The notes below the pieces were generated by a model. That model searched no databases. It was not told where the DNA came from and worked only from the letters and a program-made list of their open reading frames with translations. From IMG/VR virus record IMGVR_UViG_3300027668_000008, positions 124,001 to 188,000 of that record: a DNA stretch of 64,000 nt; one strand, written 5' to 3'. Both the position numbers and the translations under genes were made by a program. Below, one piece after another: positions 3,985-26,749 of this stretch. Each line of letters begins with the position of its first letter. Positions within the stretch are counted from its first letter, which is position 1.

Positions 3985-4061
3985 TGGCGCACCCTACAGG
4001 ACTCGAACCTATTACCTCTGGTTCCGCAAACCAACGCTCTATCCAGATGAGCTAAGGGTGC
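3985..4061 (-). tRNA. tRNA-Arg, anticodon GCG
   Basis: GCACCCT/AGGGTGC acceptor stem, A20, anticodon arm TTGGT-TTGCGGA-ACCAG, TTCGAGT T-loop, encoded CCA. Confidence 0.9.
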
Positions 4062-4072
4062 CTTTATAGTTT

Positions 4073-4148
4073 TGGTGGAGGATACAGGGATCGAACCTGC
4101 TACCTCCTGAATGCAAATCAGGCGCTCTCCCAGATGAGCTAATCCCCC
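4073..4148 (-). tRNA. tRNA-Ala, anticodon TGC
   Basis: GGGGGAT/ATCCTCC stem with G3:U70, arm CCTGA-TTTGCAT-TCAGG, encoded CCA. Confidence 0.95.
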
Positions 4149-4181
4149 AAAACTAAATTCTTTTTGTAACATACTAATACT

Positions 4182-4210
4182 ATAATATAACATTCAACGA
4201 GTGTTGTCAA
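4182..4210 (-). promoter_or_regulatory. sigma70-type promoter for tRNA-Ala/tRNA-Arg
   Basis: TTGACA-N17-TATTAT. Confidence 0.75.
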
Positions 4211-4222
4211 GAGCCATAAAAG

Positions 4223-4312
4223 TGGCGGAGAGACTGGGATTTGAACCCAGGAAAGAGTTGCCCCTTTGCCGGTTTAGTAAACCGGTGCTTTCAACCGCTC
4301 AGCCATCTCTCC
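4223..4312 (-). tRNA. tRNA-Ser (long variable arm), anticodon ACT
   Basis: GGAGAGA/TCTCTCC stem, G73, long variable arm AAAG-GGGCAACT-CTTT, arm CCGGT-TTACTAA-ACCGG, encoded CCA. Confidence 0.88.
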
Positions 4313-4321
4313 GGAGTATTT

Positions 4322-4525
4322 TTATTTAGGTACGATTTCAAAACACTTAACTAGTGCCTGCATATCAGTCAAACCAGCCGCTTTACATTCTGCGTATAAT
4401 TTCTTTCTAGCGCCGACTACTTCGTCTGGTGCTACTTTTATACTTTGCATCCTATTTGATTTTGCATTAGGATTCATGCCACGATATCTGGTATTATGTT
4501 TATTATTTTTGTTACGATCATTCAC
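4322..4525 (-). CDS. Small basic hypothetical protein between tRNAs
   Basis: 67-aa ORF, GTG start. Confidence 0.55.
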   Translation of the reverse strand: MNDRNKNNKHNTRYRGMNPNAKSNRMQSIKVAPDEVVGARKKLYAECKAAGLTDMQALVKCFEIVPK

Positions 4526-4541
4526 GCAATTTATTTTTCTG

Positions 4542-4617
4542 TGGTGCCGCTTCCCGGATTCGAACTGGGCACCTACTGATTACAAATCAGTTGCTCTACC
4601 AAATGAGCTAAAGCGGC
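4542..4617 (-). tRNA. tRNA-Thr, anticodon TGT
   Basis: GCCGCTT/AAGCGGC stem, arm ACTGA-TTTGTAA-TCAGT, encoded CCA. Confidence 0.95.
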
Positions 4618-4899: not shown

Positions 4900-4920
4900 T
4901 TTGTGATTATTCTTTAAAGG

Positions 4921-5817
4921 TTATGCTAGTTTGAACATTCCGCCAAAGATGTTATCAACAAATGTACTGTGGTCAATCTGCTCGTAACTTGTGCAGTTCT
5001 CGGGTAGAAACCCTCGATGCCACATATAAACAAAACTAGCAACTACACAGGCGTTAGCATAATGCCAACTGTTAAGTGTTCTTCGTCCAGGTATCAGTAA
5101 ATGACTGTGTTTTACTAAATCTTCTGTTTGATACTCTGAACTACTTGTAACCGTAGTATGGAACAATGTTTCTGTGTGCCAATCAACTTTACTAGCATCA
5201 ACGTTGTCGGTATCTGCTATCCAGTTTGTTTGTATGTCGATATTATCATCTCCTAGCCATGAATCAATTTCACTAGCGAAAAAATATTTATTTTGTAACT
5301 TAATAAGTTTAGGTTGCCCTAATACGTTATTCATTACTTCTTGGTAATCTTCTAATGACAATCCAGGTAAAGCATTTTCACCTGTTTCACTAGTTTTAGA
5401 AATTCCTGTAAAATGTTTGATAGACTTTACATTCTCGTTTACATTAACAATACGTTTAATCCACATATCCGTTGCCGCATATTGTAAATTAATATCATCT
5501 AAAATAATGTTATTGTGCGGTGCTACGTCATCTTGTAATGCAAATGTACAAAGTAACGGTATTCCGAATTCTGAACATAAGCCTACTATATTGTCATCTT
5601 CATAGTTTGGGTTTGTACAAACTACAATGTCAGCACCTCTGACAATATCATGCATTGTTAGTGTTGATGTAAATTTTCTAACATATGCTGGGTTCAAATA
5701 ATTATCACCAAAACAAGTAACTTGAATTTCATCATCGAACTGTACTGCATTAATTTCAAGTAATGTTTTTACGGCATATAAATTTTTGCCATCGCCTACT
5801 ATGTGTATATTAATCAT
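4921..5817 (-). CDS. Rossmann-fold protein, saccharopine dehydrogenase / homospermidine synthase-like (divergent)
   Basis: N-terminal IHIVGDG, DIVRGADIVVCT and CSEFGIPLL resemble the NAD(P)-binding domain of this family. Confidence 0.4.
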   Translation of the reverse strand: MINIHIVGDGKNLYAVKTLLEINAVQFDDEIQVTCFGDNYLNPAYVRKFTSTLTMHDIVRGADIVVCTNPNYEDDNIVGLCSEFGIPLLCTFALQDDVAPHNNIILDDINLQYAATDMWIKRIVNVNENVKSIKHFTGISKTSETGENALPGLSLEDYQEVMNNVLGQPKLIKLQNKYFFASEIDSWLGDDNIDIQTNWIADTDNVDASKVDWHTETLFHTTVTSSSEYQTEDLVKHSHLLIPGRRTLNSWHYANACVVASFVYMWHRGFLPENCTSYEQIDHSTFVDNIFGGMFKLA

Positions 5818-6121
5818 TGAACCTCTCCCTAACGTGTTGATAAAAAGTGTCTAATTCTCCACCAAACTGTCCGGTTAGATGGTCTACTGCTTGTAGGCAA
5901 TATTCTGTATTATTGTTGTTCAATTCAATTACAAAGTCTTCGTGCAACTTTGTCCAGTTTTCTAACTGTGGTAAACTGTCAAGGCTTAGTTTAGCAGTAT
6001 CTACAACTGCATATAGTGTAAGGTCTGTGTTCTTTTCTTTCACAGTAACCGTGTCTAGTTCAAGCACGGTGTACCTGTCTCTTAATGCTTCTGCTTGTTT
6101 TTTACCATATACTATGTGCAT
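5810..6121 (-). CDS. Stand-alone homologue of the adenylate cyclase C-terminal region
   Basis: MHIVYGKKQAEALRDRYTVLELDTVTVKEK aligns by eye with LTLLVGESSVSDEYTFIELDKIAVKGK of the cyclase at 9030-11063; the helical tail (LHEDF..ELDTFYQHVRER vs EHDKY..ELHNYYEVMSER) also aligns; ATG at 6121. Confidence 0.65.
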   Translation of the reverse strand: MHIVYGKKQAEALRDRYTVLELDTVTVKEKNTDLTLYAVVDTAKLSLDSLPQLENWTKLHEDFVIELNNNNTEYCLQAVDHLTGQFGGELDTFYQHVRERFND

Positions 6122-6201
6122 CTTTGCCTCTCTTGAATAACTTATTATACTAGTACTTATCTTCTTCAAAGATAGGTAAATAATAATGTAAGTTAAGTAT
6201 T

Positions 6202-6230
6202 ATAATAACAGAATTATGTTGTTATGTCAA
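6202..6230 (-). promoter_or_regulatory. sigma70-type promoter for the 6121-4696 operon
   Basis: TTGACA-N17-TATTAT. Confidence 0.7.
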
Positions 6231-6239
6231 GGAGAATGT

Positions 6240-6518
6240 ATGGATATTTTTAAACTCATAGCAGAACTAGGTTTCCCTATTGCAGGTGCTTTAGCGGCTG
6301 GCTTCTTTGTCTTTACAACAGTAAAATTTATACTTGCAAGTGTAACTAGTAGTATTCAAGGGCTAAAAGGTATTGTAGGCAGTTTAGACAACCGTGTACA
6401 AACAATGAATAACGACTTGGTTAAAATGGATTCATTAATAAGTTATGCATTTGGCGTTAAACCAAATGTAGACAGAATTGCCGCTAATGAAGGCAAAGAA
6501 GACGCAAGGAGAGACTAA
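6240..6518 (+). CDS. Small membrane protein with GFPI motif, paralogue 1 (one TM plus coiled coil)
   Basis: ATG 6240 with GGAGA RBS; LGFPIAGALAAGFFVF, then LDNRVQTMNNDL. Confidence 0.8.
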   Translation: MDIFKLIAELGFPIAGALAAGFFVFTTVKFILASVTSSIQGLKGIVGSLDNRVQTMNNDLVKMDSLISYAFGVKPNVDRIAANEGKEDARRD

Positions 6519-6802
6519 TGGCAGATATAGATATTAACCAAACAGTGGAAGCACCACCCGTTGATGATGGTTGCATTACTGAATGTTTTGGCGAAGCAGA
6601 CAGAGTTGGTGTAGAGTTCACTGACGCCGGTGTAGTTAAAAATATTACAATAGATGATAGTGTTTCCGGTATAGGTGATGTACAAGCAGGTATAGAATTT
6701 ATCTATAATATGCGAGAACATATGGTAGATATTAGTGTAGCCACAGTATATGCAATAACTGTGTATGCTCTTGTTTTATGGATTAAAAGGAAGTTAAGAT
6801 AG
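6518..6802 (+). CDS. Small acidic protein with C-terminal TM helix
   Basis: TAATG coupling; C-terminal hydrophobic helix followed by KRKLR. Confidence 0.75.
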   Translation: MADIDINQTVEAPPVDDGCITECFGEADRVGVEFTDAGVVKNITIDDSVSGIGDVQAGIEFIYNMREHMVDISVATVYAITVYALVLWIKRKLR

Positions 6803-6814
6803 TGATATTTAAAC

Positions 6815-7135
6815 ATGATAGTAACAGATTTAATTAGCGATTACGGATTTCCTATTGTTGCCGCGGTGGGCATGGGATATTTCGTATATTATATATGGAA
6901 ATGGGTAACTATTGAAGTTAAACCTTTAATTGGCGCAACTAGTGGAACACTTATAGGGTTAATTGACCGTATAAGAATGCTCGATAACGACATGATAAGA
7001 TTAACACAAAAGATTAACATGGTTATAGAGTTCAAAGAAGAATACGAAAAACTAACGGGGAAGAAACTCGCAATGACTGTCGATGACATCGAATCGATTA
7101 AGAAAGAGAACTTAAAGAATGCTAAAAAGAAATAA
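6815..7135 (+). CDS. Small membrane protein with GFPI motif, paralogue 2
   Basis: YGFPIVAAVGMGYFVYYIW, then LIDRIRMLDNDMIRL; clearly similar to 6240-6518. Confidence 0.8.
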   Translation: MIVTDLISDYGFPIVAAVGMGYFVYYIWKWVTIEVKPLIGATSGTLIGLIDRIRMLDNDMIRLTQKINMVIEFKEEYEKLTGKKLAMTVDDIESIKKENLKNAKKK

Positions 7136-7268
7136 CAACTGGCTTAATAGTCAAAATACTGCTACTAAAATATATTTAAAATCACAACCTATATGGCATG
7201 ATAAAGATATGCTTATCGTAATTACTGTTGCTTTATTGTCTGGATTTCTTGTAGGACTTGCAGTTTAA
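7119..7268 (+). CDS. 49-aa membrane protein (QPIWHD motif), not in the ORF track
   Basis: Manual translation MLKRNNNWLNSQNTATKIYLKSQPIWHDKDMLIVITVALLSGFLVGLAV; overlaps the end of 6815-7135. Confidence 0.65.
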   Translation: MLKRNNNWLNSQNTATKIYLKSQPIWHDKDMLIVITVALLSGFLVGLAV

Positions 7269-8241
7269 CAATTGGTAAGAATTTCCATTGTAATACGTTA
7301 TTATCTTTACAATAGTCTTCAAACCTATGTCTAATTGCAACAACATTATCTGCACCATATTTAATTCTAGTTGGCAAGTATGTAAAGATATTAGAACGCC
7401 ATATGCTAGAACCAGGCTTTATCCAGGAAAAATCTTCTATAATATCCTTATTAAGGAATTCAACTGGAATAGATTCAAACCAATCCCAAAAATCTTCTCT
7501 GTCTATACTATCAGGTAACTGATTTAATACCGTTTCTTTATTGGTATAAATTTCTTTGTAGTACTCGATACTGTGTTTGCTTATATCATAAAACACAACT
7601 GTGTCAGGTATTACGTTATTTTTATAATATTCAGTTAATGTTATAAATGGTTTGTTACCAGCACACAATAAGTAAAGTGTTTTATCATAAGAGTAAAATT
7701 TATCGTATTGTTCTTTGCTACAATCTTTGTACACAGGTTCTGTGTTTTCCACATATAACCTATCTAAGTCTAAATTATAGTTGTGTTCGGTTTCCCAATC
7801 ATCATCAGTTTTGACAAATGTATCCAATCCAACTTCTTTAGAAAACCATTTTATTGTTGTATTAACAGGAACATCTTGTACAAACGTATCAGATCCTGAC
7901 ACAAACCAATCATGATTTAATCGTATAACAAAACAAAAACTATTCATGTTTTTAAATGCAATAATATCCGGTTCATCTTTAATTGCTTCTTTTACAAAAT
8001 CTAACATTAATTCGTTACGCAAATATGTACCTTCTCGAACGATAAGTGCGTAATCTGCCTTGTTTCTGAGGTTAGTAAGAGTACTGTCTAATGTACCAGT
8101 AATTTTAAATATATCAATATGTTCGTTATCTGCTACAGTATTATCATCTCTGATCAATCCCATATCAAATATGTTTGACCAAGTTATGTTGTGTAAGTAC
8201 TCGTCACTTGTACAATTTAATGCTACTGCTACTAAATTCAT
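7222..8241 (-). CDS. Hypothetical protein
   Basis: 339-aa ORF coupled to the upstream hydroxylase. Confidence 0.7.
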   Translation of the reverse strand: MNLVAVALNCTSDEYLHNITWSNIFDMGLIRDDNTVADNEHIDIFKITGTLDSTLTNLRNKADYALIVREGTYLRNELMLDFVKEAIKDEPDIIAFKNMNSFCFVIRLNHDWFVSGSDTFVQDVPVNTTIKWFSKEVGLDTFVKTDDDWETEHNYNLDLDRLYVENTEPVYKDCSKEQYDKFYSYDKTLYLLCAGNKPFITLTEYYKNNVIPDTVVFYDISKHSIEYYKEIYTNKETVLNQLPDSIDREDFWDWFESIPVEFLNKDIIEDFSWIKPGSSIWRSNIFTYLPTRIKYGADNVVAIRHRFEDYCKDNNVLQWKFLPIVKLQVLQEIQTIKQQ

Positions 8242-8864
8242 ATCAACTTCCTGTAGTTTTCATAAGCCTGTTTCTTAAACTCTGTAGTTTTGCCACCATG
8301 TAAAATAATATGATATCTATGTTCATTGCTATTATTACGAACACTGTGCTTGTTACTTAAATCTAACCATGCACCTTTATTTTGTTTAAATGGTACAACT
8401 CCGACATCCTCCATAACAAATTCACATCCTTCTGGATTGTTAATTGCAATGTTGATAGGACCTAATCTACTTTTATCATAATCTCTATGTGATTCAATAT
8501 AACCACCGGGTGCTACAGACATAATTCTAATTCTATCAAAGTCTATAAAATAATTTTGTTCTAACAACCATTGTTTAAGTGAAGGTATACTGTTACTTGC
8601 GTTAGTCCAATCAAAGACTGCATCTTCTTCTTGTATATCATAAAACATTGGAGCATTAGTGAATTCATCACCTTGCCCGTGCATAACTAATGATGACCAA
8701 CCTTTTGATTGGTCTTCTCTGTGATTATAAAAGTTATCTTGTGCTTGTGATATTTCTTGTAAAATATTTTCTACAGGCATATTGACATCGAACATTAAAT
8801 AAGGTAACTTACTATCTGTTCTTAATTCAATTGGATTTTTACATTCTTTGTTAAAACTTAACAT
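8238..8864 (-). CDS. Aspartyl/asparaginyl beta-hydroxylase-like 2OG-Fe(II) oxygenase
   Basis: IRIMSVAPGGYIESHRDY (HxD) and HSVRNNSNEHRYHIILHG; likely start ATG 8864 (ORF extends to 8927). Confidence 0.8.
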   Translation of the reverse strand: MLSFNKECKNPIELRTDSKLPYLMFDVNMPVENILQEISQAQDNFYNHREDQSKGWSSLVMHGQGDEFTNAPMFYDIQEEDAVFDWTNASNSIPSLKQWLLEQNYFIDFDRIRIMSVAPGGYIESHRDYDKSRLGPINIAINNPEGCEFVMEDVGVVPFKQNKGAWLDLSNKHSVRNNSNEHRYHIILHGGKTTEFKKQAYENYRKLI

Positions 8865-8883
8865 TTGTCGATTGTCTTTTCTT

Positions 8884-9021
8884 TTATTCTTGTTCGCCGT
8901 TTGCTTTACTTTTTGCGTAGGCGGCATCTGCTCTCATTTGTGTTGCTATTCGCAGTTGCATATAATCTCTTAAAGGTGGCTTAGTCTTTGGTTTATCTTT
9001 TCGTGCAGAACCCAGACTCAA
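8884..9021 (-). CDS. Possible 45-aa basic peptide (TTG start)
   Basis: Manual translation MSLGSARKDKPKTKPPLRDYMQLRIATQMRADAAYAKSKANGEQE fills the intergenic gap. Confidence 0.35.
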   Translation of the reverse strand: MSLGSARKDKPKTKPPLRDYMQLRIATQMRADAAYAKSKANGEQE

Positions 9022-9029: not shown

Positions 9030-11063
9030 TTATTTGCTTGTTGCGATGAATACTCCGTCCCATTGTTTTGTACCTTTTCTTTTTAGCTCATGGGCCCGTT
9101 CAGACATTACTTCATAGTAATTATGAAGCTCTTCAGGGCATACACTTTGTAATTTGGAAATTTGATTAATCGCTAGATCCCACTTGGAATCTCTATATAA
9201 CTGCAAATATTTATCATGTTCCTTGACGTAATTAACTGCACACTCACTAAACAAAGCAGTATAAATGGTAGCCGGTACTGTCTTGCCCTTAACTGCTATT
9301 TTATCTAGTTCTATGAATGTGTATTCGTCGGATACTGAACTTTCACCAACTAACAATGTTAAACCGTACTCTTTACTTTGCCCCTCTAGTCTTGCCGCTA
9401 AATTAACACAATCACCCAAAACTGAGTAGTCAAAACGTTGATTAGACCCCATATTACCTACCACAGCACTACCTGTGTTAATACCAACACCAATTTTAAT
9501 AGGCATTAATCCTTCGGATTCTAATTCTTTATTAAGTTTTCTTAATGCAACAAACATCTCATCAGCAGTTTTAATTGCTAATTCACGTTGTTTAGGAACA
9601 TCTAAAGGTGCGTTCCAAAATGCCATAAGTGCATCACCAATATACTTGTCTACTGTGCCTTCGTTTTTCATAACAATATCTGTCATAGGTGTCATGTACC
9701 TATTAATTAAAGAAGTTAACCCTTGTGGATTTGTTTTGTATTGTTCACTAATAGGAGTAAATCCTCTAATGTCACTAAACAATAAAGTTAACTCTCTTGT
9801 ATCGCCACCTAACTTTAATAGTTCTGGATTTTGTTGTAATTTCTTAACCATAGCAGGTGCTAGATAGTGCTCAAACTGTTTTTTAATTTGTTGTTTTAAA
9901 CTAAACTCTTTTACAAATCTATTAAACACTGCATGAAAGCCTGTAAGTACAAATACTATTAATGGCATTGTTACATCGAGCAAATACAAATAGTGTTGCC
10001 ATGCATACAATGAACCATATACTAATCCTGCACTAACACTTAATATCGTAAGTCCAACAATATAATATGGTAATCTAACACTTATTAAAATAATAAGGAG
10101 ACCTAACGTAACAGAAGTTAGTAATTCAACTAGCACGGCCCAATACGGGCGTTGTATCTGGTCTCCGTCGATAACTGTTTGTAGTGTTACTGCCGAAGGT
10201 ATATAATTATATTTAGGACCAGTAGGTGTAGCAATTACTCCACCGATGCCTTCTGCTGTCGAACCTATAATAACTGTTTTGCCTGCGAATAAAGAAAAGT
10301 CGTCACTACTTGCACTAATTGTTTCAAACTCTTTATTCCAACGTAACCATATTTGTCCATTGGGATCTGTACTAATAATTGGATATCCCGGAACACGAAT
10401 TTTATCTATTCCGCCTTGGTTTGCTTTAATTTGATAACTTGGTTTACCTGTACTAACTCTAATAACTTCGATTGCTATTGATGGGTATGTGTTAGTGCCT
10501 ACTCTCATAATTAAAGGAACACGTCTTACAACACCATCTATCTCATTAGGTGTATTTAGAACACCAACGCCGTCTGCATTTAAGCCTAGTAACGGAATAG
10601 GTCCTAACATACCGGGCCATTCGAACAAATAAGGTACTGCATCACCTATTGTTGCAACTCCTCTTGTTACCGCATTTTTATTTACTTTTAAACTTCCTAC
10701 TTGTGCAATAACAATCCCATTGCCGGCTATCGATTCAACAAATGCTTGGTCACCGCCTAATCTATCATCTTCACTAAACAGTATAGGTATTACAATTACA
10801 CCTGCTCCTGCTTCACGCAACTTCCAAATAAGTTCTGCTAGAACATCACGTTTCCAGGGCCACTGTCCGTATTTTTCAATAGATGCTTCATCTATTGTTA
10901 CAATACCAATGTCGTTGGATACAACCGGAGTATCGGTTTGTTGTAGTAAATCAAACTGTTTAAGTCTCAATATTTCAACTATACTACTATTGCCGTAATG
11001 GAAGAAGGTTAGAACTGCCAATGTTACAAAGGCAGTTAACCAATGCGTTAAATATTTTTTCAT
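9030..11063 (-). CDS. CHASE2-domain class III adenylate cyclase
   Basis: N-terminal TM; CHASE2 motifs IDEASIEKYGQWPWKR and DGVVRRVPL; three TMs; catalytic LFSDIRGFT, DKYIGDALMAF, VGNMGS, DYSVLGDCVNLAARLEG, IAVKGK. Confidence 0.95.
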   Translation of the reverse strand: MKKYLTHWLTAFVTLAVLTFFHYGNSSIVEILRLKQFDLLQQTDTPVVSNDIGIVTIDEASIEKYGQWPWKRDVLAELIWKLREAGAGVIVIPILFSEDDRLGGDQAFVESIAGNGIVIAQVGSLKVNKNAVTRGVATIGDAVPYLFEWPGMLGPIPLLGLNADGVGVLNTPNEIDGVVRRVPLIMRVGTNTYPSIAIEVIRVSTGKPSYQIKANQGGIDKIRVPGYPIISTDPNGQIWLRWNKEFETISASSDDFSLFAGKTVIIGSTAEGIGGVIATPTGPKYNYIPSAVTLQTVIDGDQIQRPYWAVLVELLTSVTLGLLIILISVRLPYYIVGLTILSVSAGLVYGSLYAWQHYLYLLDVTMPLIVFVLTGFHAVFNRFVKEFSLKQQIKKQFEHYLAPAMVKKLQQNPELLKLGGDTRELTLLFSDIRGFTPISEQYKTNPQGLTSLINRYMTPMTDIVMKNEGTVDKYIGDALMAFWNAPLDVPKQRELAIKTADEMFVALRKLNKELESEGLMPIKIGVGINTGSAVVGNMGSNQRFDYSVLGDCVNLAARLEGQSKEYGLTLLVGESSVSDEYTFIELDKIAVKGKTVPATIYTALFSECAVNYVKEHDKYLQLYRDSKWDLAINQISKLQSVCPEELHNYYEVMSERAHELKRKGTKQWDGVFIATSK

Positions 11064-11094: not shown

Positions 11095-12549
11095 CTAATC
11101 TGATTGTGTAAAGGTCGTTGTTCCACAACCAGCGGCATTAGTGCAACTTTGTGTTAAACTATATGTCTTATCTGAACTACCATCTTGGTGTAAATCCAAT
11201 GTACTTGAATACCCAGACATATTAATTGTTGCGGCATGGTCGCCTGATCCATCTTGGTCAACTGAAACAGTTTGGTTACTTCCAACTGTAATGTCTTGAA
11301 AGTGTGTTCCTGTTCCGGCTTGGTCTAAATCTAATGTGTTAGAACTTCCGTTAATATCCACAAACATCATTTTATCGCCATCGTCATTTTGTTGTAAATT
11401 TATATTGTTACTATTTCCTGCAATGTCGACATCCATAAAATGACCCAAGTTACCAACGGCTCCGTCTTCTTCTTGAGTGAAAGTTCCTGTATTACTATTA
11501 CCAACTACATTTAATCTTAAATCATGGTCACCATCATCATCGATATTGTCACCTTGTCGTATTGTCATAGTGTTACTATTTCCGTTAATATCTAGCAAAA
11601 CAGTATTGCCATCACTAAATGATCCTGAGTTATTACCCTGTGTAATTGATAGTGTATTATCGTCGCCAGTTATTTCTGCGTTGTCGATACTGCTGGAAGT
11701 TGTTCCTAAACCTGCAACTAAATTATCATTGTCGTATTGTATAATGTCTATGTTTGCATTATTACCACTTTGTGTAATATAAATTCCGTTGCCACTGTGT
11801 GTTATTCCTCTTGTAGTTGATCTTAAATTAGTTTGTGCAGTTGTAGGTTCTGAAGTATATGATGCTGGACTGAATACGCCTTCCTCTTCAAGTGTTTCTC
11901 CTAAAAAGACATACATTCTTGCTGAACGAGTTGTGTTAGCATTATTAAATTGTGCCTGGTCTAAAGTGATAATTAATTTACCACCATTACTACCATAACC
12001 ATATACTGCCCAAGATTTCCAGCCACTAAGGCCTGATGCTGTATTTGACGCTATCGCCGTACCACCCGATTGCATTGAAAAAAGATTTCTTGTTACCCAT
12101 GAATTTGAAACGGTATATTGAGAACCATTAGCGTGAGAAGTATAGTTTGCCTCACCATTGTATATTGAGATAGCACCTACACTTAATTTACTTTCAACAA
12201 GCGATTCAATGCTCAGCGTTCTAGCGCCATCATGGTCACCATTACCAGCAATTAAAACTGTGCCACCTGCACTAATGTAAGTTTCATATGCTGTCTTACA
12301 GGTACCACCACAACTGTTATTACCTGCTATGTTAATGTGTAAATCTTTACCAGTAAAATCACTTAAAGTAACTGAACCACTATTTGTGCCTGTAACTGTA
12401 AACCCATGACCCTCTAACTCACCTTTTACTTTATTGTACATATTGGTATCAGTATAGTTTATATGAGCTGTTTCGGCAAATGCTTGTATAGGTAATACTA
12501 ATAATAAACTAATTAGACTGATTAATAGTGATCTGATTAACACCGGCAT
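11095..12549 (-). CDS. Large secreted protein: N-terminal globular domain plus C-terminal curlin-like repeats
   Basis: Signal peptide; repeats of type I-x-G-x-x-N-x-x-x-I-x-Q (ITGDDNTLSITQ, INGNSNTMTIRQ, VVGNSNTGTFTQ, IAGNSNNINLQQ, INGSSNTLDLDQ). Confidence 0.8.
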   Translation of the reverse strand: MPVLIRSLLISLISLLLVLPIQAFAETAHINYTDTNMYNKVKGELEGHGFTVTGTNSGSVTLSDFTGKDLHINIAGNNSCGGTCKTAYETYISAGGTVLIAGNGDHDGARTLSIESLVESKLSVGAISIYNGEANYTSHANGSQYTVSNSWVTRNLFSMQSGGTAIASNTASGLSGWKSWAVYGYGSNGGKLIITLDQAQFNNANTTRSARMYVFLGETLEEEGVFSPASYTSEPTTAQTNLRSTTRGITHSGNGIYITQSGNNANIDIIQYDNDNLVAGLGTTSSSIDNAEITGDDNTLSITQGNNSGSFSDGNTVLLDINGNSNTMTIRQGDNIDDDGDHDLRLNVVGNSNTGTFTQEEDGAVGNLGHFMDVDIAGNSNNINLQQNDDGDKMMFVDINGSSNTLDLDQAGTGTHFQDITVGSNQTVSVDQDGSGDHAATINMSGYSSTLDLHQDGSSDKTYSLTQSCTNAAGCGTTTFTQSD

Positions 12550-13600
12550 CTCCTAACTGTACATTATCTACACCAACAAAATTCTGCTTTAATGTTATGT
12601 TATAACTGTAATCTCTATCTAATCGTAGTTCCATAAAATTACCTGCACTATCTTCTTTAATAATAAGGTAACTAGGATCGTTTGTAAATGTTATTCCTGT
12701 TGTTTCGTCGAATCCAATTTTAAAACCATTCCTAGGATCAAATGCTTGTTTAAGTTTTTTGCTTAATTCTGCATTTAATACGACTAGTAAGTCTTGTAAA
12801 AAATCTTGTAATAAGAAGTCAATGTCTAATTCGTTTGCAAGTTCCTCATTTGATTCTTCTAATAAATCTTCATCTAAATCGTTAAATTCTAAAAAGTCAA
12901 TATCTAATGCACTTGATACATCTGATAGTTGCTCTGCTAGTTCTATTGCTTCTTGTAAATCCTTGGGCTTTTGTACGATTAACAAGTTGTTAATCATATT
13001 AGCATCTAAATCCAGTATAATAGGTTTTAAAGGTTTAGATTCAAATGTTGTAACTACTGTTGTTTGAAATGCTTGATTCATTATAACAAATCCTGCATCT
13101 GTTTCAACTTCAATTTCTCCTACATAACAGTTGCCGTTGCTATCGCAACTCGGTAGTAAAATTATAAGACTGCTTCCAATCTCATCTACTGTCATCGTGA
13201 AGTCAGTGCCTCTTACTCCAATGACTGCCGTAGGTGTTTTGATCTTTACATTTTGTTTAAACTTTTTTCCTATTTGCCCACTTGCATACCTAACTGTGCC
13301 TAAACTGGCTTTGATAGATAGTGATCCAATATCATTTGCAGGGTCATAGACAAATTCATCGATTATTACATTACTGTGTGGCGTAATTTCTAATTTAGTA
13401 TCGTCTATAAATTCTATATTTTGTTTATGCTTAAATGTTTCTATTCGGTCCATAGAGAATATATCAGAATCCACATCACCTTGTTCAGTTGTGTCTTCTC
13501 TATAAATCTTACTTGGTCCGTCCGATTTAGTAATTTTACCTATACTGGCAAATCCACTAGTCGGAAGAAAGCAGATTAGTATAACACAGAGCCACTTCAT
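12509..13600 (-). CDS. Secreted FecR-domain protein
   Basis: Signal peptide; FIDDTKLEITPHSNVIIDEF, GTVRYASG, IKTPTAVIGVRGTDF. Confidence 0.85.
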   Translation of the reverse strand: MKWLCVILICFLPTSGFASIGKITKSDGPSKIYREDTTEQGDVDSDIFSMDRIETFKHKQNIEFIDDTKLEITPHSNVIIDEFVYDPANDIGSLSIKASLGTVRYASGQIGKKFKQNVKIKTPTAVIGVRGTDFTMTVDEIGSSLIILLPSCDSNGNCYVGEIEVETDAGFVIMNQAFQTTVVTTFESKPLKPIILDLDANMINNLLIVQKPKDLQEAIELAEQLSDVSSALDIDFLEFNDLDEDLLEESNEELANELDIDFLLQDFLQDLLVVLNAELSKKLKQAFDPRNGFKIGFDETTGITFTNDPSYLIIKEDSAGNFMELRLDRDYSYNITLKQNFVGVDNVQLGDAGVNQITINQSN

Positions 13601-14292
13601 TAGTCGCTCTGCGTAATGTCTATGTCAGAATTGGTGCCAACTGTTGTTAATTGTATTTTGTTGTCATAAATTCCACTTTGTGTAATGTCCACTGTAGTAC
13701 CTTCACCTGTATGATTATGTGTTAAACTATGTCCTGCACTATCTCCTGCGCCTGACATTATATAGTTCGCCGTGTTATCTACTGAACTGCCTAATGCATC
13801 ATTATCCATATCGATGTCTGCATCTGCGTTCGCGGCATTTACTGTTAGTGTGATAGTATCTTCGTTGCTAGTTGCTAAATCTATTGTTCCTACAAAGTTA
13901 GCCGATGATGCACTGGCTCCAATAGCAACTGTTACTGTTGCGTCATCGCCGACTACATCTATGCTCATACTTACTGTTTCACAATTAGAACTTGCACAAG
14001 TTAAAGCAACTGTGTTAGAGTTACCTGTTAAATCTATATTACCTGTGTAAGTAGTACCGTTAATAACTGTAGACACAACGTTACTGTTACCAACTTGATC
14101 AATATTAAATGTCATGCTGTTACCAGTTAAGGATATCGCTGTACTGCTGTTACCTGCCACGTTGTTCTGTCCGTCCTGTGTTATATCCAAGTTTAAATTA
14201 TTACCACTTTGTGTAATATAGATATCATTAGCATACACCGAACTTATAGAACAAACCAGAAACAAGAGCACATAAACTATTTTATTTGTCAT
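13600..14292 (-). CDS. Secreted curlin-like repeat protein
   Basis: Signal peptide then NDIYITQSGNNLNLDITQDGQNN; Gly/Asn/Gln beta-solenoid repeats. Confidence 0.8.
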   Translation of the reverse strand: MTNKIVYVLLFLVCSISSVYANDIYITQSGNNLNLDITQDGQNNVAGNSSTAISLTGNSMTFNIDQVGNSNVVSTVINGTTYTGNIDLTGNSNTVALTCASSNCETVSMSIDVVGDDATVTVAIGASASSANFVGTIDLATSNEDTITLTVNAANADADIDMDNDALGSSVDNTANYIMSGAGDSAGHSLTHNHTGEGTTVDITQSGIYDNKIQLTTVGTNSDIDITQSD

Positions 14293-15355
14293 TTATTTTC
14301 TCCGTCTGTTTCTGCCCTTTTAGTTTAGTTAACGTTTCCCATAGATACATATCAGCAGTGTTTTTAAAACAGTTGCCTCCTGCATTGCAAACGTTAAAGT
14401 CATCTCCCGGTGCTCCTTTTAGCATTTCACTTTCGTGCATAGTTGGGATTGAGTTAATGTCCGGTTTAGAAATAGGCACAGATTTTAATTTAGAACTTTG
14501 GAGAGTCGTATTTTTATCATCTGTATTAATTACTTCACCGGACTTATGGATTAACTTCGTAGTTTTTTGTGTCGTTTTCTTAAACTTCCACAAGCCCTTG
14601 ATTTCGCCTTCTTTGACGATCTCGACAATAGCCTGCTCAATAGCAAGTCTAACTGCCTGATTGGTAGGTTCATTAACTGCTGAACCTATCTCAATTTCTA
14701 ATGCTCTTGTACCTAAATCTAAAAATCTAAATACATCTGAGCTATCTTTATAACTTGCAATAGTCTTATCAACTGCAACCGACAGTAGTATTTCACCAGT
14801 TGATACACTAATAATTCTCATTGCCACAGATACTCTATCTGTTCTGTATTCTTTTGATGCTCCAATACCAAAGTATCTTGCACCTACACCGCCACTTTCA
14901 ATGTTGCTATCGTAACCTATAATAGCACCATCTAATAATAGTCCAGCAAATAACATAGGTTGTAATGCTAGTGCATCTTTACCTTCAAAATTTTCTCTTG
15001 TGCTTCTTATTAATTGTCTTTCTTTTACCAACGAGTCTAAACTAACACGTTCTAATACCTTAAACCATTTACCGCCTCCGGCTTGTTGCAATGCACGAAT
15101 CACATGACTCTCTGCACCTTGCGTTACTGCGGTACTTAATTGACTAAAATTTGTTGAAGGTTTACGTTGTCCTGTTTTATCTCCAAAGCCGTATAGTGCT
15201 ATGGTAATAATAGGTCCGTCGATTGGTGGTAAGTTTAGAAGTGCATTAACCCCTATTGGTATCGAAGCAGGTGGGTCGTATCTGACTTGCTTTACAGGGT
15301 TACCTGCACAAGCACCTAGTAACAATATGATGGATAATGCTACAAATATCCTCAT
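14282..15355 (-). CDS. csgG: Curli secretion channel CsgG (lipoprotein) with C-terminal extension
   Basis: Lipobox LLLGAC; FGDKTGQRKP, STAVTQGA, WFKVLERVSLDSLVKERQLIR, GAIIGYDSN, GVGARYFGIGA, GEILLSV. Confidence 0.95.
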   Translation of the reverse strand: MRIFVALSIILLLGACAGNPVKQVRYDPPASIPIGVNALLNLPPIDGPIITIALYGFGDKTGQRKPSTNFSQLSTAVTQGAESHVIRALQQAGGGKWFKVLERVSLDSLVKERQLIRSTRENFEGKDALALQPMLFAGLLLDGAIIGYDSNIESGGVGARYFGIGASKEYRTDRVSVAMRIISVSTGEILLSVAVDKTIASYKDSSDVFRFLDLGTRALEIEIGSAVNEPTNQAVRLAIEQAIVEIVKEGEIKGLWKFKKTTQKTTKLIHKSGEVINTDDKNTTLQSSKLKSVPISKPDINSIPTMHESEMLKGAPGDDFNVCNAGGNCFKNTADMYLWETLTKLKGQKQTEKINDK

Positions 15356-15358
15356 CCA

Positions 15359-15808
15359 TTAAAACCCGAAGCCACTTAATGGCACCACTAGTTCACTAAA
15401 TGAACCATCGGCTTCAGTTATCTGTACAGTAATTGTACTCGAAGATGTATCTTTAATCCAGTATATAGTTGCACCTTCGACAGTTGCAGTACCACTATTG
15501 GCACCAGTGTCAGAAAACATACTATCAACTAAATTTTTGGATAAGTTTGCGTAAATTCTTGATTCAACGTTTGCTAAGAATTTTGAAAGAGTTTCTTGGG
15601 CGGCATCTCTAACTGCTTGTCTTTCAGCCGCTTCTTTGGCTTTCTTTATTTCAGCCGCACGTTGGAATTGGAGTTGCTCTATACTTAAGACGTGTGTACT
15701 ATAACCTTTTCCACTAAAGGAAGGATTTTTAAATTCATGTGTTAAGTCGCTGGCGTATGCAGGCGTCATAACGAACATAGTCAAGGCTATAGTGATAAAA
15801 AATTTCAT
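15359..15808 (-). CDS. csgF: Curli assembly component CsgF
   Basis: Signal peptide then SDLTHEFKNPSFSG; ITVQITEADGSFSELVVP; directly upstream of csgG. Confidence 0.88.
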   Translation of the reverse strand: MKFFITIALTMFVMTPAYASDLTHEFKNPSFSGKGYSTHVLSIEQLQFQRAAEIKKAKEAAERQAVRDAAQETLSKFLANVESRIYANLSKNLVDSMFSDTGANSGTATVEGATIYWIKDTSSSTITVQITEADGSFSELVVPLSGFGF

Positions 15809-15828
15809 AATAATACGATCTCCATTAG

Positions 15829-15836
15829 TATTTATA
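15829..15836 (-). promoter_or_regulatory. TATAAATA late promoter of the csgF-csgG operon
   Basis: Exact T4 late consensus about 20 nt upstream of csgF. Confidence 0.7.
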
Positions 15837-17188: not shown

Positions 17189-18328
17189 TTACTCGCCTAT
17201 AGTTGAATTTTCATAGACTGTATTTAATTGATTTGCTACTTGAATAAATGTAGCACACTTCGAAAGTCGCTTTAACTTATTTGCTCCAACGTAAGTGCAG
17301 GCACTTCTGATGCCTCCTAGAATGTCTTGAATAGTTATGTCTACATCTCCGCGATAAGGTACTAGTGCAGTACGTCCTTCGCTACTACGGTAGTCTTTTA
17401 AGCCACTAAAGTGTTTTTCGTTGGCTGTTTTAGAACTCATACCGTAGAATTGCACAAACTTCTTTTCTTCTATCTTTCTAGTTGTACCAGTTGACATTTC
17501 ATTAGTCATATATTTTTTAGTAATTACTTCGCCACCGCCTTCATTATGTCCTGCTAACATACCGCCAAGCATAACAAAATCTGCTCCTCCGGCAAAAGCC
17601 TTAGCAACATCACCCGGGCAAGTACAGCCACCATCAGCAATGATATGTCCACCTAATCCGTGGGCCGCATCAGCACATTCCATAACTGCTGAAAGTTGAG
17701 GATATCCAACACCAGTTTTAAGTCTAGTAGTACAAACACTGCCAGGACCAATACCAACTTTAACAATATCGGCTCCATTTAATATCAATTCCTGTGTTTG
17801 GTCTGCCGTAACTACGTTACCGGCAATAATAACAATTTCTGGATAACTTTTCCTAAACGCACTAATAAAGTCTAAAAAGCGTTCACTATACCCGTTTGCT
17901 ACATCAATACAAACATATTTTAATTTGTTACCTGTTTGCTCGTATACATCACGAAACTTTTGTTGGTCGTGGTCTAAAATTCCTATGCTCATTGCTACAT
18001 TATTACTACGTTCGTTACCTTCTACGTCAAAGTAACTTACTAGTTCTGTAACTGTGTAAGTTTTAACTAGACAGGTAAAAATTCTTTGTTTTGCTAACTT
18101 ATCAGCCATAGCAAGTGTGCCAACACCGTCCATGTTTGAAGCCATAAGTGGTATGCCTTTAAAGTCGCCATGCTCTGAACGTCTATTTAATCCTGGTTCG
18201 CTTGGCTTATAATGACGATAAGTAAACCTACGGTGTAAATCTACTTCTTTCCGTGAACCCAATGTACTACGTTTAGGTCTCATTAATACACTAGCATAAT
18301 CTAGTTTGATATCTGATTCTATTCTCAT
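17189..18328 (-). CDS. guaC: GMP reductase
   Basis: PLMASNMDGVGT, CIDVANGYSE, IIAGNVVT, VKVGIGPGSVCTTR, ADGGCTCPGDVAKAF, FYGMSS, YRSSEG. Confidence 0.95.
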   Translation of the reverse strand: MRIESDIKLDYASVLMRPKRSTLGSRKEVDLHRRFTYRHYKPSEPGLNRRSEHGDFKGIPLMASNMDGVGTLAMADKLAKQRIFTCLVKTYTVTELVSYFDVEGNERSNNVAMSIGILDHDQQKFRDVYEQTGNKLKYVCIDVANGYSERFLDFISAFRKSYPEIVIIAGNVVTADQTQELILNGADIVKVGIGPGSVCTTRLKTGVGYPQLSAVMECADAAHGLGGHIIADGGCTCPGDVAKAFAGGADFVMLGGMLAGHNEGGGEVITKKYMTNEMSTGTTRKIEEKKFVQFYGMSSKTANEKHFSGLKDYRSSEGRTALVPYRGDVDITIQDILGGIRSACTYVGANKLKRLSKCATFIQVANQLNTVYENSTIGE

Positions 18329-19041
18329 TTTATTATCTCAATCCTTGGTGATAAATGTTTAGGTTGAAAACCTAATTTCTTCATATATGTAATGTCGGCT
18401 AATGTGTGTTGTCTTTCATGTGGCGTGTGTAATTTAATTGGTAAGTCGGGTGCATAATCTCTAACTTGCACACTATTACCCGATCCAATATCAATACACC
18501 CTATAACATCGGGATTAGTAACTAGTATCCAAATTGCATCTAAACAATCATCCATGTGTATAAAATCTCTAGTATGATTTGTTACATATTCTAATGTTTT
18601 ATTTTTTAACTTATCAAAAAACATTCCTTCTCTTGGTACATCCGAATATACAGTATGAAATCGCATACCAACTGTAAAAGGATAAGATGCTCCTAAGAAT
18701 TCCAAACAATGTTTGGAAGCCGCATACGGATTTAAATGTGGTTCATATTGTGAGCTCGAACTTGCATAAAGAATTCGTTTGCCTTTATACTTGTCAAATA
18801 AGCGTCTACTGGCTTCAATGTTATTCAACCAATAACTTGTTGGGTCTGCTAAACTTTGTCTTACTCCACTTTTACCTGCTAAATGTATAACAATGTCTAC
18901 AGTATGAGGTTCAGGCAGTTCACAATCCAGTAAATCGTTACCATCTTGTTTGTCGATACCTATTACATTATGAAAATCTCCAAGACGTTTTGTTAACTGA
19001 GATCCAATAAAACCTTTGTGTCCTGTTATTAGAATATTCAT
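18325..19041 (-). CDS. NAD-dependent epimerase/dehydratase (short SDR)
   Basis: ILITGHKGFIGS, IHLAG, YASSSS, YAASK, RDFIHMDD. Confidence 0.9.
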   Translation of the reverse strand: MNILITGHKGFIGSQLTKRLGDFHNVIGIDKQDGNDLLDCELPEPHTVDIVIHLAGKSGVRQSLADPTSYWLNNIEASRRLFDKYKGKRILYASSSSQYEPHLNPYAASKHCLEFLGASYPFTVGMRFHTVYSDVPREGMFFDKLKNKTLEYVTNHTRDFIHMDDCLDAIWILVTNPDVIGCIDIGSGNSVQVRDYAPDLPIKLHTPHERQHTLADITYMKKLGFQPKHLSPRIEIIK

Positions 19042-19574
19042 CGGGTTATTCCAAAATGTTTAAAGGACTGCTGAACACACTTTGCTTGATAATAACAATC
19101 TGCCAAGGCGTTGTGAGCATCTGTTTGTATTGCTTTACGAGGATCTACAGGCATCATACTAAACAATGTTCTACTATCTCGCACTTGCCAGAAGTTCCAT
19201 GGAATAGGTTGTTTCATCTGTCTATATAAATTTTCTAATATAACCATATCGAATGCAGGACCTTGACACCAAATTTGATCACAGCCAATTAACCATTTGT
19301 TAAGTTGTGCTAATGTATCTGCAACACTTGTGCGATTTTCATCACCTAATGCTTCGTCTTGAATTTCTTTCTTTTGTTTGCCCCACCACTCGAGTGTTCC
19401 AGGATCCACACTACGATTCATAGTAGATTGTTCATCTACATCTAAACGTAAATATAAACCTTTTGCAGGTTCTTCATTATTATATGGATTAAATTTTATT
19501 CCACCCAGTGTAAGTACTGTGCAGTCTGGTTGAGTGCCTAGTGTTTCTAGGTCAATCATTGCGTGTGTTGACAT
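19038..19574 (-). CDS. DEDDh 3'-5' exonuclease (DexA/Rv2179c-like)
   Basis: MIDLETLG, WCQGPAFD, VRDSRT, HNALADC. Confidence 0.9.
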   Translation of the reverse strand: MSTHAMIDLETLGTQPDCTVLTLGGIKFNPYNNEEPAKGLYLRLDVDEQSTMNRSVDPGTLEWWGKQKKEIQDEALGDENRTSVADTLAQLNKWLIGCDQIWCQGPAFDMVILENLYRQMKQPIPWNFWQVRDSRTLFSMMPVDPRKAIQTDAHNALADCYYQAKCVQQSFKHFGITR

Positions 19575-26340: not shown

Positions 26341-26479
26341 AAAATTACTTGGTACTTTTTATATATCTGTATATAGTTCGTCACGTTCACTGAAACGTGT
26401 GCAATTAGAAAGTGTATTTCCATGTTACCAGTGTATGCTTGTAACAATCCTTTGTCACTAATGTTTCTAACTTTGGTAT

Positions 26480-26745
26480 ATGCAACGATTTCTGTTGCTA
26501 GGTACGTTGCCAACCCCCACGTGCTTATTTTACTAAGCCGCTAATGCCATTTCTGGCTGATAATTGTTATTTGCAATTATAAAGTTTCTTCGCGATAACG
26601 GTGCTTAGATCCCGAGAACTCCACTAACTCTAGTAATTACCTGTCGATCCTATTCATCCCCATATGAAAAATCTGTTGTATTTGGTGGAGATGCCGGGAT
26701 TCGCACCCGGGTCCAGTTTAACTTTTGAATTGCTTCAACGTTCTA
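26480..26745 (-). ncRNA. ssrA: Circularly permuted two-piece tmRNA (alphaproteobacterial type), tag ANNNYQPEMALAA
   Basis: Acceptor piece ends with T-arm and CATCTCCACCA at 26683; 21-nt spacer; coding piece starts GGGGATGAATAGGATCGAC at 26661 (G3:U70); tag ORF 26574-26533; CCTAGCAACAGAA near the 3' end. Confidence 0.93.
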
Positions 26746-26749
26746 AGTA

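What the first reader, a model, noticed from the sequence alone, without database searches (positions are those of the whole stretch)
5810..6121. Stand-alone copy of the cyclase C-terminal tail without catalytic residues
This 103-aa ORF matches the end of the cyclase (TVLELDTVTVKEK vs TFIELDKIAVKGK, plus the helical tail) but lacks both metal-binding Asp residues and the N/R pair. It is the first gene under its own sigma70 promoter, while the full cyclase has a late-type box. Inference: an early-expressed inhibitor or decoy that binds the phage or host cyclases.
Basis: partly seen in the sequence, partly recalled or inferred. Interest (0 to 1): 0.65.

Follow-up and report, generated by a model that had tools for sequence, protein, structure and literature searches.

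The report
Phage stand-alone cyclase-tail protein family
A 103-residue gene of a large marine phage is a true, conserved, non-catalytic relative of the last ~110 residues of membrane-sensor cAMP/cGMP cyclases. It belongs to a large, undescribed family of phage proteins, and whether it controls such cyclases is still untested.

Summary
Window 5810-6121 (-) encodes a 103-aa protein homologous to the C-terminus of the window's CHASE2 class III cyclase (9030-11063 -). Evidence: BLASTP E 5e-7; profile-profile probability 99.1%, E 1.6e-18 over 111 columns; predicted fold superposes on viral CHASE2-cyclase models at TM 0.81, rmsd 1.9 Å over 97 of 103 residues.

It covers only the last strand-helix-strand-strand of the catalytic domain plus a three-helix tail. 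Both metal Asp and the Asn/Arg pair are therefore missing.

It is neither a recent copy nor a remnant. At least 262 clusters (50% identity) of 82-144-aa stand-alone proteins exist, almost all viral, forming one clade apart from all cyclase tails. dN/dS is about 0.26.

Its usual neighbour is an Rv2179c-like exoribonuclease gene (63 of 80 loci), upstream of a curli-like cluster. Eight of 11 long contigs also carry a cyclase, one 92%-complete genome has none, and Melnitz and HTVC008M have the cyclase without it.

A strong sigma-70-type promoter is present and conserved. The exact late box lies before CsgF, not the cyclase.

The inhibitor/decoy idea is plausible but untested, and the complex prediction gave no verdict. 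The family is new and its function is open.

The parts
5810..6121 (-). Gene for the 103-aa stand-alone cyclase C-terminal-module protein (P0001); the stop codon is at 5810-5812.
   Evidence: Translation. Family of intact ~100-aa proteins. Homology to the cyclase C-terminus. AF2 model with pLDDT 84 and pTM 0.71. Fold match to cyclase models. dN/dS about 0.26.
6127..6132 (-). Shine-Dalgarno-like GAGAGG, 5 nt before the ATG at 6121.
   Evidence: Sequence; invariant in relatives.
6202..6230 (-). Sigma-70-type promoter TTGACA-17-TGtTATTAT, with the palindrome ATAACA-N9-TGTTAT inside the spacer.
   Evidence: Scores 11 of 12 with a TG extension. Invariant in four relatives. One of 12 such sites in the window, all on the minus strand, against 1.43 expected by chance.
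4921..5817 (-). Downstream gene (298 aa) whose start overlaps the end of the small gene by 8 nt. It is the partner gene only in the window's clade.
   Evidence: ORF list. The same pair occurs in L010-L013, L018 and L019. No Pfam or PHROG match. Language-model lead to saccharopine-dehydrogenase-like proteins.
9030..11063 (-). CHASE2 class III nucleotidyl cyclase, 677 aa (P0002), the only cyclase in the 306.7-kb record.
   Evidence: Pfam CHASE2 at 15-323 and Guanylate_cyc at 423-597. phrog_35576. Single PF00211 match in the whole record.
9033..9368 (-). Part of the cyclase (residues 566-677) that is homologous to the small protein: the last strand-helix-strand-strand of the catalytic domain plus a three-helix tail ending in W-D-G-V.
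   Evidence: Alignments. AF2 model of residues 400-677, tail blocks 210-270 at pLDDT 87-96. Solved cyclases align fully only to about residue 608, and a few reach model residue ~250 (P0002 ~650) with one extra helix.
15829..15836 (-). Exact T4-late-type box TATAAATA, 20 nt before the CsgF start, at the head of the curli-FecR-cyclase cluster.
   Evidence: Nine of the 10 boxes in the window lie on the coding strand.
14282..15808 (-). CsgF-like (15359-15808) and CsgG (14282-15355) genes. In most related phages the small gene sits directly before CsgF.
   Evidence: Pfam CsgG. Contexts.
19038..19574 (-). Rv2179c-like 3'-5' exoribonuclease gene. In 63 of 80 related loci its stop abuts the start of the small gene, but in this window the two are 13 kb apart.
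   Evidence: Pfam PF16473; neighbourhood counts.
6240..6518 (+). Divergently transcribed 92-aa membrane-protein gene that shares the conserved intergenic region.
   Evidence: phrog_18771. 90% identical in L012, where the small protein is only 61% identical.

Best explanation
Shown: the gene encodes a stand-alone, catalytically dead version of the C-terminal module of CHASE2-type class III cyclases. The module is the last strand-helix-strand-strand of the catalytic domain plus a TPR-like three-helix tail. The gene belongs to a large, old family that is almost entirely phage-borne and under purifying selection. In this phage it is the first gene behind a sigma-70-type promoter.

Inferred: it acts by protein binding rather than catalysis. 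Its most likely targets are cyclases that carry the same module. The host's own CHASE2 cyclase is the first candidate and the phage's late-expressed cyclase the second. It would either pair with, or compete with, their C-terminal module. The effect would be to change cAMP or cGMP output early in infection, in the way domain-only decoys act.
For: Homology and fold:
- BLASTP, profile-profile, HMM and whole-genome profile searches all agree.
- The fold search matches cyclase models over nearly the full length.
- The order of secondary-structure elements is the same in both AF2 models.

Not catalytic:
- No Pfam cyclase hit.
- The homology starts after D431, D477, N554 and R558.
- The KGK lysines are not kept across the family.

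A real, constrained gene:
- 363 clusters at E <= 1e-3 and 262 at E <= 1e-10; the 150 listed are all 82-144 aa and nearly all match from residue 1.
- dN/dS about 0.26.
- Seven invariant and nine nearly invariant positions across 46 sequences.

Phage-borne: Atlas clusters are 93-100% viral, and there are no stand-alone copies in 47 cellular genomes.

Early-type promoter.

Candidate targets exist:
- Cyclases with this tail occur in at least 489 cellular genomes. These are mostly marine Alphaproteobacteria, including a Pelagibacteraceae MAG, plus SAR86.
- They occur in 28 of 42 genomes of that MAG's order.
- The family profile scores cellular Curvivirga tails at 53 bits and tails of the Pelagibacteraceae-MAG order at 29-39 bits, against 21 bits for the window's own cyclase.

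Co-occurrence: 8 of 11 long contigs with the small gene also carry a ~680-aa cyclase.
Against: - No evidence of binding: the complex prediction gave no verdict.
- The family has its own nearly invariant motifs (YTVLEL[DE]T, G-K-F-G-G-E-L-D-x-F-Y) that cyclases lack. It is only 18-26% identical to cyclase tails. This fits a new function.
- One 92%-complete, 320-kb phage genome has the small gene but no cyclase.
- Melnitz and HTVC008M have the cyclase but no small gene.
- The constant neighbours are an exoribonuclease gene and chaperone-type genes, not the cyclase.
- The host is unknown, so a host target cyclase is assumed, not shown.
- What the tail does in cyclases is itself unknown. No solved structure covers the whole three-helix tail.
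Confidence: 0.35

Rival explanations
1. Exapted binding module. The protein descends from a cyclase 3' fragment but now binds something unrelated to cyclases. Examples would be a component of host RNA decay or proteostasis, or host RNA polymerase, as part of the early takeover gene set in which it usually lies.
For: - Its start abuts the stop of the Rv2179c-like exoribonuclease gene in 63 of 80 loci.
- It lies at the end of a conserved S21-HSP20-ClpS-(CTP transferase)-exoribonuclease row.
- The subtype ending in W-D-G-V lies next to ClpS and GroEL, without curli genes.
- The family forms one clade far from all cyclase tails and has motifs of its own.
- It is present without a cyclase in a 92%-complete genome.
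- The helical part looks like a generic TPR-like three-helix unit, a common protein-binding shape.
Against: - The neighbour is not constant. In the window's clade the gene is 13 kb from the exoribonuclease gene and is coupled to a different 298-aa gene.
- In L015-L017 another 79-aa gene intervenes.
- Adjacency in related phages may be inherited synteny only.
- Residues shared with cyclase tails (His, Tyr seven residues on, F/Y-Y, Arg) are still kept.
Confidence: 0.3
2. A self-associating small sensor or adaptor. The sheet face that packs on the cyclase core in the enzyme is used here for homodimerisation. The glycine-rich loop and the conserved His/Tyr/Arg would bind a small anionic ligand, such as a nucleotide or phosphate compound.
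For: - The three strands are the best conserved part of the family. In the cyclase these strands belong to the catalytic-domain sheet.
- A nearly invariant G-K-F-G-G-E-L-D loop precedes the last helix.
Against: No test of oligomeric state or ligand binding was possible. The lysines that touch the triphosphate in cyclases are not conserved. No match to any known nucleotide-binding family.
Confidence: 0.1
3. A decaying remnant of a second cyclase gene, or a chance ORF.
For: It corresponds to a 3' fragment of a cyclase gene.
Against: - Intact in every locus read.
- Nearly all of the 150 listed family representatives match the profile from residue 1, and all are of like length.
- dN/dS about 0.26.
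- Own promoter and ribosome-binding site, conserved in relatives.
- Confident compact fold.
- Pieces of it occur in contigs of two marine RNA libraries (weak, since DNA carry-over is not excluded).
Confidence: 0.02

Closest known systems
Class III nucleotidyl cyclase catalytic domain (Pfam PF00211), as in P. aeruginosa CyaB (3r5g), Spirulina CyaC (1wc0) and Cya2 (2w01)
   Same: Residues 1-40 of the small protein are homologous to the last strand-helix-strand-strand of this domain. They superpose locally on solved cyclases over about 40 residues at rmsd 2.1-2.2 Å, although the Foldseek E-values are not significant.
   Different: About three quarters of the domain is absent, including both metal-binding Asp, the Asn/Arg pair and the dimerisation arm. 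There is no Pfam hit. It cannot be a cyclase.
C-terminal tail of CHASE2 cyclases of phages (Melnitz type, phrog_35576) and of marine Alphaproteobacteria and SAR86. A similar tail is predicted on dCache_1- and hemerythrin-linked cyclases.
   Same: Homologous over the whole length, with the same order of secondary-structure elements. It keeps the His, the Tyr seven residues on, the F/Y-Y and the Arg. The 117-122-aa subtype also keeps the terminal W-D-G-V.
   Different: It is free-standing and forms one separate clade. It has motifs of its own. P0001 ends before the W-D-G motif. The function of the tail in the enzymes is not described in the papers I could find.
Domain-only decoys and dominant-negative 'microproteins', such as viral K3L, FLIPs, pyrin-only proteins and Id proteins (from general knowledge)
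   Same: A short paralogue that keeps an interaction module of a larger signalling protein and lacks its active part. This is the mode of action proposed here.
   Different: No binding or inhibition has been shown for this family. This is a resemblance of logic, not of sequence.
Phage proteins that blunt cyclic-nucleotide signalling (Acb1, Apyc1, Tad1/Tad2, Acb2; from general knowledge)
   Same: A possible shared aim: control of nucleotide second messengers during infection.
   Different: No sequence or fold relation was found. Those proteins degrade or sequester the messenger. This one would act on the synthase, if it acts on this pathway at all.

Membership tests
Class III nucleotidyl cyclase catalytic domain (PF00211) | Scores above the Pfam gathering threshold | tested here: not met
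   No Pfam family for P0001 even at E <= 1. The window's cyclase scores 70 bits in the same call.
Class III nucleotidyl cyclase catalytic domain (PF00211) | Two metal-binding Asp (D431 and D477 in P0002) | tested here: not met
   The homology begins at P0002 residue ~566, after both Asp. P0001 has no counterpart region.
Class III nucleotidyl cyclase catalytic domain (PF00211) | Transition-state Asn/Arg pair (N554 and R558 in P0002) | tested here: not met
   The pair lies before the homologous part.
Class III nucleotidyl cyclase catalytic domain (PF00211) | Complete palm-like core with dimerisation arm | tested here: not met
   The model has only three strands and one short helix from the domain, followed by three helices. 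Compare the cyclase model.
C-terminal module of CHASE2-type cyclases (undescribed; defined here by alignment A5) | Profile-level sequence homology over the whole module | tested here: met
   hhalign 99.1%, E 1.6e-18, 111 columns. Reciprocal HMM hits.
C-terminal module of CHASE2-type cyclases (undescribed; defined here by alignment A5) | Same fold: strand-helix-strand-strand followed by three helices | tested here: met
   Secondary structure of both models. TM 0.81, rmsd 1.9 Å over 97 residues to a viral CHASE2-cyclase model. Both sides are predictions.
C-terminal module of CHASE2-type cyclases (undescribed; defined here by alignment A5) | Conserved His in the first tail helix and F/Y-Y...R in the last helix | tested here: met
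   H60, Y94 and R100 of P0001 align with H616, Y650 and R656 of P0002.
C-terminal module of CHASE2-type cyclases (undescribed; defined here by alignment A5) | Terminal W-(D/N)-G-V...K motif | tested here: not met
   P0001 ends at residue 103, before this motif. It is present in the 117-122-aa subtype (L061, L071, L077, L092, L096, P0022, P0023).
Tetratricopeptide (TPR) repeat proteins | Repeated 34-residue helix pairs with a significant structural match | tested here: inconclusive
   Residues 46-103 align with TPR-like and other three-helix units at Z 5.7-7.2, within the range the tool calls common for helical models. No Pfam TPR hit.
Known anti-phage defence proteins and Pycsar cyclases (PADLOC-DB) | Match to a PADLOC model | tested here: not met
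   No PADLOC hit for P0001. The full cyclase matches PycC models only through the shared catalytic domain, ending at residues 562-581.

The most novel reading that the evidence does not exclude
This family is a new class of phage takeover protein: an early-made mimic of the C-terminal module of the host's CHASE2 cyclase. It would bind that enzyme (or the partner of its tail) and switch off or rewire host cAMP or cGMP sensing. The phage later expresses its own sensor cyclase together with the curli-like secretion cluster. This would be the first phage factor known to act on a second-messenger synthase by domain mimicry, and it would give a handle on the unknown role of the cyclase tail.
Probability: 0.2. 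Interest if true: 0.75.

Novelty: new variant of a known kind. Interest (0 to 1): 0.5.

Why it matters
- The family is large: at least 262 clusters at 50% identity. It is nearly all viral and carries no annotation in Pfam or PHROGs.
- It lies in abundant marine phages related to pelagimyophages, whose curli-cyclase cluster is itself unexplained in the literature (PMC7029224).
- Knowing that it derives from the end of a sensor cyclase gives a concrete, cheap experiment: co-expression with a CHASE2 cyclase and a cAMP read-out.
- It also points to a conserved but unstudied C-terminal module of bacterial class III cyclases. That module occurs in hundreds of marine Alphaproteobacteria and SAR86 genomes.
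- If the protein does act on cyclases, it would add a new way for phages to control host second messengers. If not, it is a clean example of a gene fragment becoming an independent protein family.

Tried and rejected
- **Complex prediction.** Cyclase residues 400-677 with the small protein gave ipSAE 0.00, 'no answer'. It counts neither for nor against binding.
- **Foldseek against the PDB.** Nothing significant. There were only local ~40-residue matches to cyclases.
- **VIA-align against 48,161 chains.** Only generic three-helix or TPR-like matches at Z about 7, too common to interpret.
- **PHROGs.** One weak hit to an 'acyl carrier protein' family (E 0.06), dismissed because it is not supported by fold or profile.
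- **PADLOC.** No hit.
- **Phage GenBank collection.** Neither megablast nor tblastn found a match.
- **Profile search of whole HTVC008M and Melnitz.** It found only the Melnitz cyclase tail and an HTVC008M stretch with six stops, which I dismissed.
- **RNA fold of the 5' leader.** Not better than shuffles (z -1.25), so I make no riboswitch or attenuator claim.
- **First count of cyclase co-occurrence.** Counting within 10 kb wrongly suggested most carriers lack a cyclase. Whole-contig searches corrected this.
- **Idea of a recent duplicate of the window's own cyclase tail.** Rejected by the tree and by profile scores.

No other genetic code was used.

Full report
**Where the window lies**

The window is bases 124001-188000 of a 306.7-kb IMG/VR virus record estimated to be 87% complete. 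By its cyclase it is related to Pelagibacter phage HTVC008M and Methylophilales phage Melnitz, at about 50% identity. Other contigs that carry the small gene reach 320-329 kb, one of them complete with terminal repeats. This is therefore a group of large marine T4-like phages.

**The observation**

- The ORF at 5810-6121 (-) gives 103 aa (P0001).
- The cyclase at 9030-11063 (-) is 677 aa (P0002), with CHASE2 at 15-323 and the class III catalytic domain at 423-597. It is the only cyclase in the record.
- BLASTP aligns P0001 12-100 with P0002 576-656 at 26% identity, E 5e-7.
- The ATG at 6121 follows GAGAGG and is the start used by all relatives.

**Is the similarity real?**

Yes, by five independent routes.

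1. Word search found 22 proteins of 74-141 aa related to P0001, and 314 IMG/VR contigs encode one. Profile-profile comparison of 46 such proteins with 35 cyclase tails gives probability 99.1%, E 1.6e-18, over 111 columns, which is the whole small protein. An earlier run against 108 full-length cyclases placed the match at P0002 577-658.
2. A profile of full-length cyclases hits other stand-alone members at 40-47 bits. The alignment starts at the strand that follows the Asn/Arg helix and, for a 117-122-aa subtype, runs to the terminal W-D-G-V.
3. The small-family profile alone, run over whole cellular genomes, finds one place per genome. That place is always the end of a 675-800-aa open frame (one contig-truncated at 497 aa), at 29-39 bits.
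4. AF2 models have the same order of elements.
   - P0001: strands 2-5, 18-27 and 32-40, with helices 7-13, 47-68, 72-82 and 91-102. pLDDT 84, pTM 0.71.
   - Cyclase 400-677: strands 171-174, 183-190 and 199-205, then helices 213-225, 229-242 and 245-263.
5. A shape search of the ESM Atlas with the P0001 model returns three groups.
   - Viral hypothetical proteins, at TM up to 0.90.
   - A 100%-viral cluster of 685-aa CHASE2 cyclases, at TM 0.81 and rmsd 1.9 Å over 97 residues.
   - Bacterial dCache_1- and hemerythrin-linked cyclases, at TM 0.70-0.71.

**What is missing**

The metal-binding Asp (D431, D477) and the Asn/Arg pair (N554, R558) lie before residue 566, where the homology starts. 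The lysines of the A-V-K-G-K strand are kept in P0001 as V-K-E-K, but not across the family. Pfam sees no cyclase domain. The protein cannot be a cyclase.

**What the homologous part is**

Solved class III cyclases align fully with the cyclase model only up to about model residue 207-209, which is P0002 ~608. A few reach ~250 through one extra helix. No solved structure covers the whole three-helix tail. The helical part of P0001 resembles generic TPR-like three-helix units at Z about 7, which is not distinctive.

Tail-bearing cyclases are common in cells. At least 489 genome contigs match, mostly marine Alphaproteobacteria (Rhodospirillaceae, Thalassospira, Curvivirga, single-cell genomes, a Pelagibacteraceae MAG) and SAR86. 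They occur in 28 of 42 genomes of that MAG's order. I found no paper that describes this tail or the small protein. The pelagimyophage papers discuss the curli genes but not the cyclase, and the CHASE2-cyclase literature I could reach does not treat the C-terminus.

**The family**

- A full HMMER scan of 1.84 billion representatives gives 363 clusters at E <= 1e-3 and 262 at E <= 1e-10. The best 150 are all 82-144 aa, and nearly all match from residue 1.
- Atlas clusters are 93-100% viral.
- Seven positions are invariant across 46 sequences (M1, L20, L22, H60, L82, G84, Y94), and nine more are nearly so.
- Pairwise dN/dS has a median of 0.26, though dS is mostly saturated.
- In a tree of 46 small proteins and 85 cyclase tails, the small proteins form one clade (SH-aLRT 99) apart from phage and cellular tails alike. 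The tree has only 120 columns, and I claim no root.
- The family profile scores two metagenomic tails of unknown origin at 51-56 bits (P0056, P0071), cellular Curvivirga tails at 53 bits, and the window's own cyclase at 21 bits.

So this is an old offshoot, not a copy of the resident cyclase.

**Genomic context**

In 63 of 80 IMG/VR loci, the stop of an Rv2179c-like 3'-5' exoribonuclease gene abuts the small gene's start. In 40 of 65 loci with enough downstream sequence, CsgF follows within about 4-90 nt.

The usual order is S21, HSP20, ClpS, (CTP transferase), exoribonuclease, small gene. Then come CsgF, CsgG, curlin-like, FecR-like and curlin-repeat genes, and further on the cyclase.

The window's clade is rearranged. 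The small gene lies after cyclase, Asp/Arg-hydroxylase-like gene, a 339-aa gene and three divergent membrane-protein genes. It overlaps the start of a 298-aa gene. The subtype ending in W-D-G-V lies after ClpS, near GroEL, without exoribonuclease or curli genes.

**Co-occurrence with the cyclase**

- Within 10 kb most loci seemed to lack a cyclase. Whole-contig searches then found a 677-707-aa cyclase 13-21 kb away in 7 of 10 long contigs.
- With the window's own record, that makes 8 of 11.
- Three contigs have none, one of them 320 kb and 92% complete.
- Melnitz has a tailed cyclase and no small gene. HTVC008M has a 611-aa cyclase without the tail and no small gene.
- All carriers are related phages, so this pattern is weak evidence for a functional link.

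**Expression signals**

TTGACA-17-TGtTATTAT at 6230-6202 (-) is the best sigma-70 match in the region. The pattern TTGACA-N16-18-TANNAT occurs 12 times in the window, all on the coding strand, against 1.43 expected. Such promoters are therefore a real feature of this phage.

The whole intergenic region is about 95% identical in relatives whose small protein is 61-82% identical.

The exact late box TATAAATA lies before CsgF. Before the cyclase there is only a 7-of-8 match.

Contigs from two marine RNA libraries cover 5955-6128 (no differences) and 5793-6019 (six differences). This is compatible with transcription but does not prove it.

**Mechanism**

- Shown: a non-catalytic, compact, conserved phage protein that is homologous to the cyclase C-terminal module, behind an early-type promoter.
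- Inferred: it works by binding.
- Most likely (0.35): it targets cyclases with the same module, host first and phage second. A gene fragment of a dimeric enzyme is most easily selected for interplay with its parent or the parent's partner. Candidate host-type enzymes are common. The family resembles some cellular tails more than the window's own cyclase tail.
- Nearly as likely (0.3): the module has been exapted to another partner. This is suggested by its own invariant motifs, its constant exoribonuclease and chaperone neighbourhood, and its presence without a cyclase.
- The one complex prediction allowed gave no verdict.

**Verdict**

Noticed in passing
window 6122-6239: The intergenic region between the small gene (-) and the 92-aa membrane-protein gene (+) is about 95% identical in relatives whose small protein is only 61-82% identical, and dS in the small gene is about 1. 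It holds back-to-back promoter-like sites, the palindrome ATAACA-N9-TGTTAT inside the promoter spacer, and a second imperfect palindrome (TATCTT..AAGATA) before a TAGTATAAT box. It may be an operator-controlled bidirectional early promoter. The adjacent 92-aa protein is also 90% identical, so a recombination boundary is an alternative.
   Followed up: partly
window, minus strand: 1391, 4182, 4685, 6202, 21094, 29881, 32534, 35133, 39883, 48217, 54276, 56243: Twelve TTGACA-N16-18-TANNAT sites lie on the coding strand, against 1.43 expected by chance. Several have a TGTTATTAT-type extended -10 box. They look like a set of host-sigma-70 early promoters.
   Followed up: partly
window 11095-15836 (-): A curli-like cluster (CsgF, CsgG, two curlin-repeat-like proteins, a FecR-domain protein) sits behind an exact T4-late box and is followed directly by the CHASE2 cyclase. 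The published pelagimyophage paper I read (PMC7029224) describes the curli genes but never mentions the cyclase.
   Followed up: partly
window 4921-5817 (-): The 298-aa protein coupled to the small gene has no Pfam or PHROG match. A language-model search gives saccharopine-dehydrogenase-like families at 0.92-0.93, some of them viral. This is a lead towards a polyamine or amino-acid dehydrogenase-type enzyme.
   Followed up: partly
window 26442-26775 (-) and 3985-4617 (-): A phage-borne tmRNA gene (tag ANNNYQPEMALAA) and four tRNA genes (Arg-GCG, Ala-TGC, Ser-ACT, Thr-TGT). The Ser tRNA has the unusual anticodon ACT.
   Followed up: no
window 9030-11063 (-): The phage cyclase matches Pycsar defence cyclase (PycC) models at up to 95 bits through the shared catalytic domain. 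The matches stop at residues 562-581, before the tail. The substrate (ATP or GTP, or a pyrimidine) was not examined.
   Followed up: no
window 6240-7268 (+): A block of small membrane-protein genes is transcribed against the prevailing direction. The first matches phrog_18771 (unknown function) and matches a holin family only weakly.
   Followed up: no
window 17189-19574 (-) and 8238-8927 (-): Auxiliary genes near the cluster: an IMPDH/GMP-reductase-like gene, an NAD-dependent epimerase, the Rv2179c-like exoribonuclease and an Asp/Arg beta-hydroxylase-like gene.
   Followed up: no
window 4900-7300: This stretch occurs at 60-100% of sampled words in marine metagenomes of many studies. Parts of it occur in six marine metatranscriptome libraries, so the phage is widespread in the sea.
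   Followed up: partly
L061, L071, L077, L092, L096 (IMG/VR loci); P0022, P0023: A 117-141-aa subtype of the small family keeps the cyclase-like terminal W-D-G-V motif and scores highest against the cyclase profile (44-47 bits). It may be closest to the ancestral fragment.
   Followed up: partly
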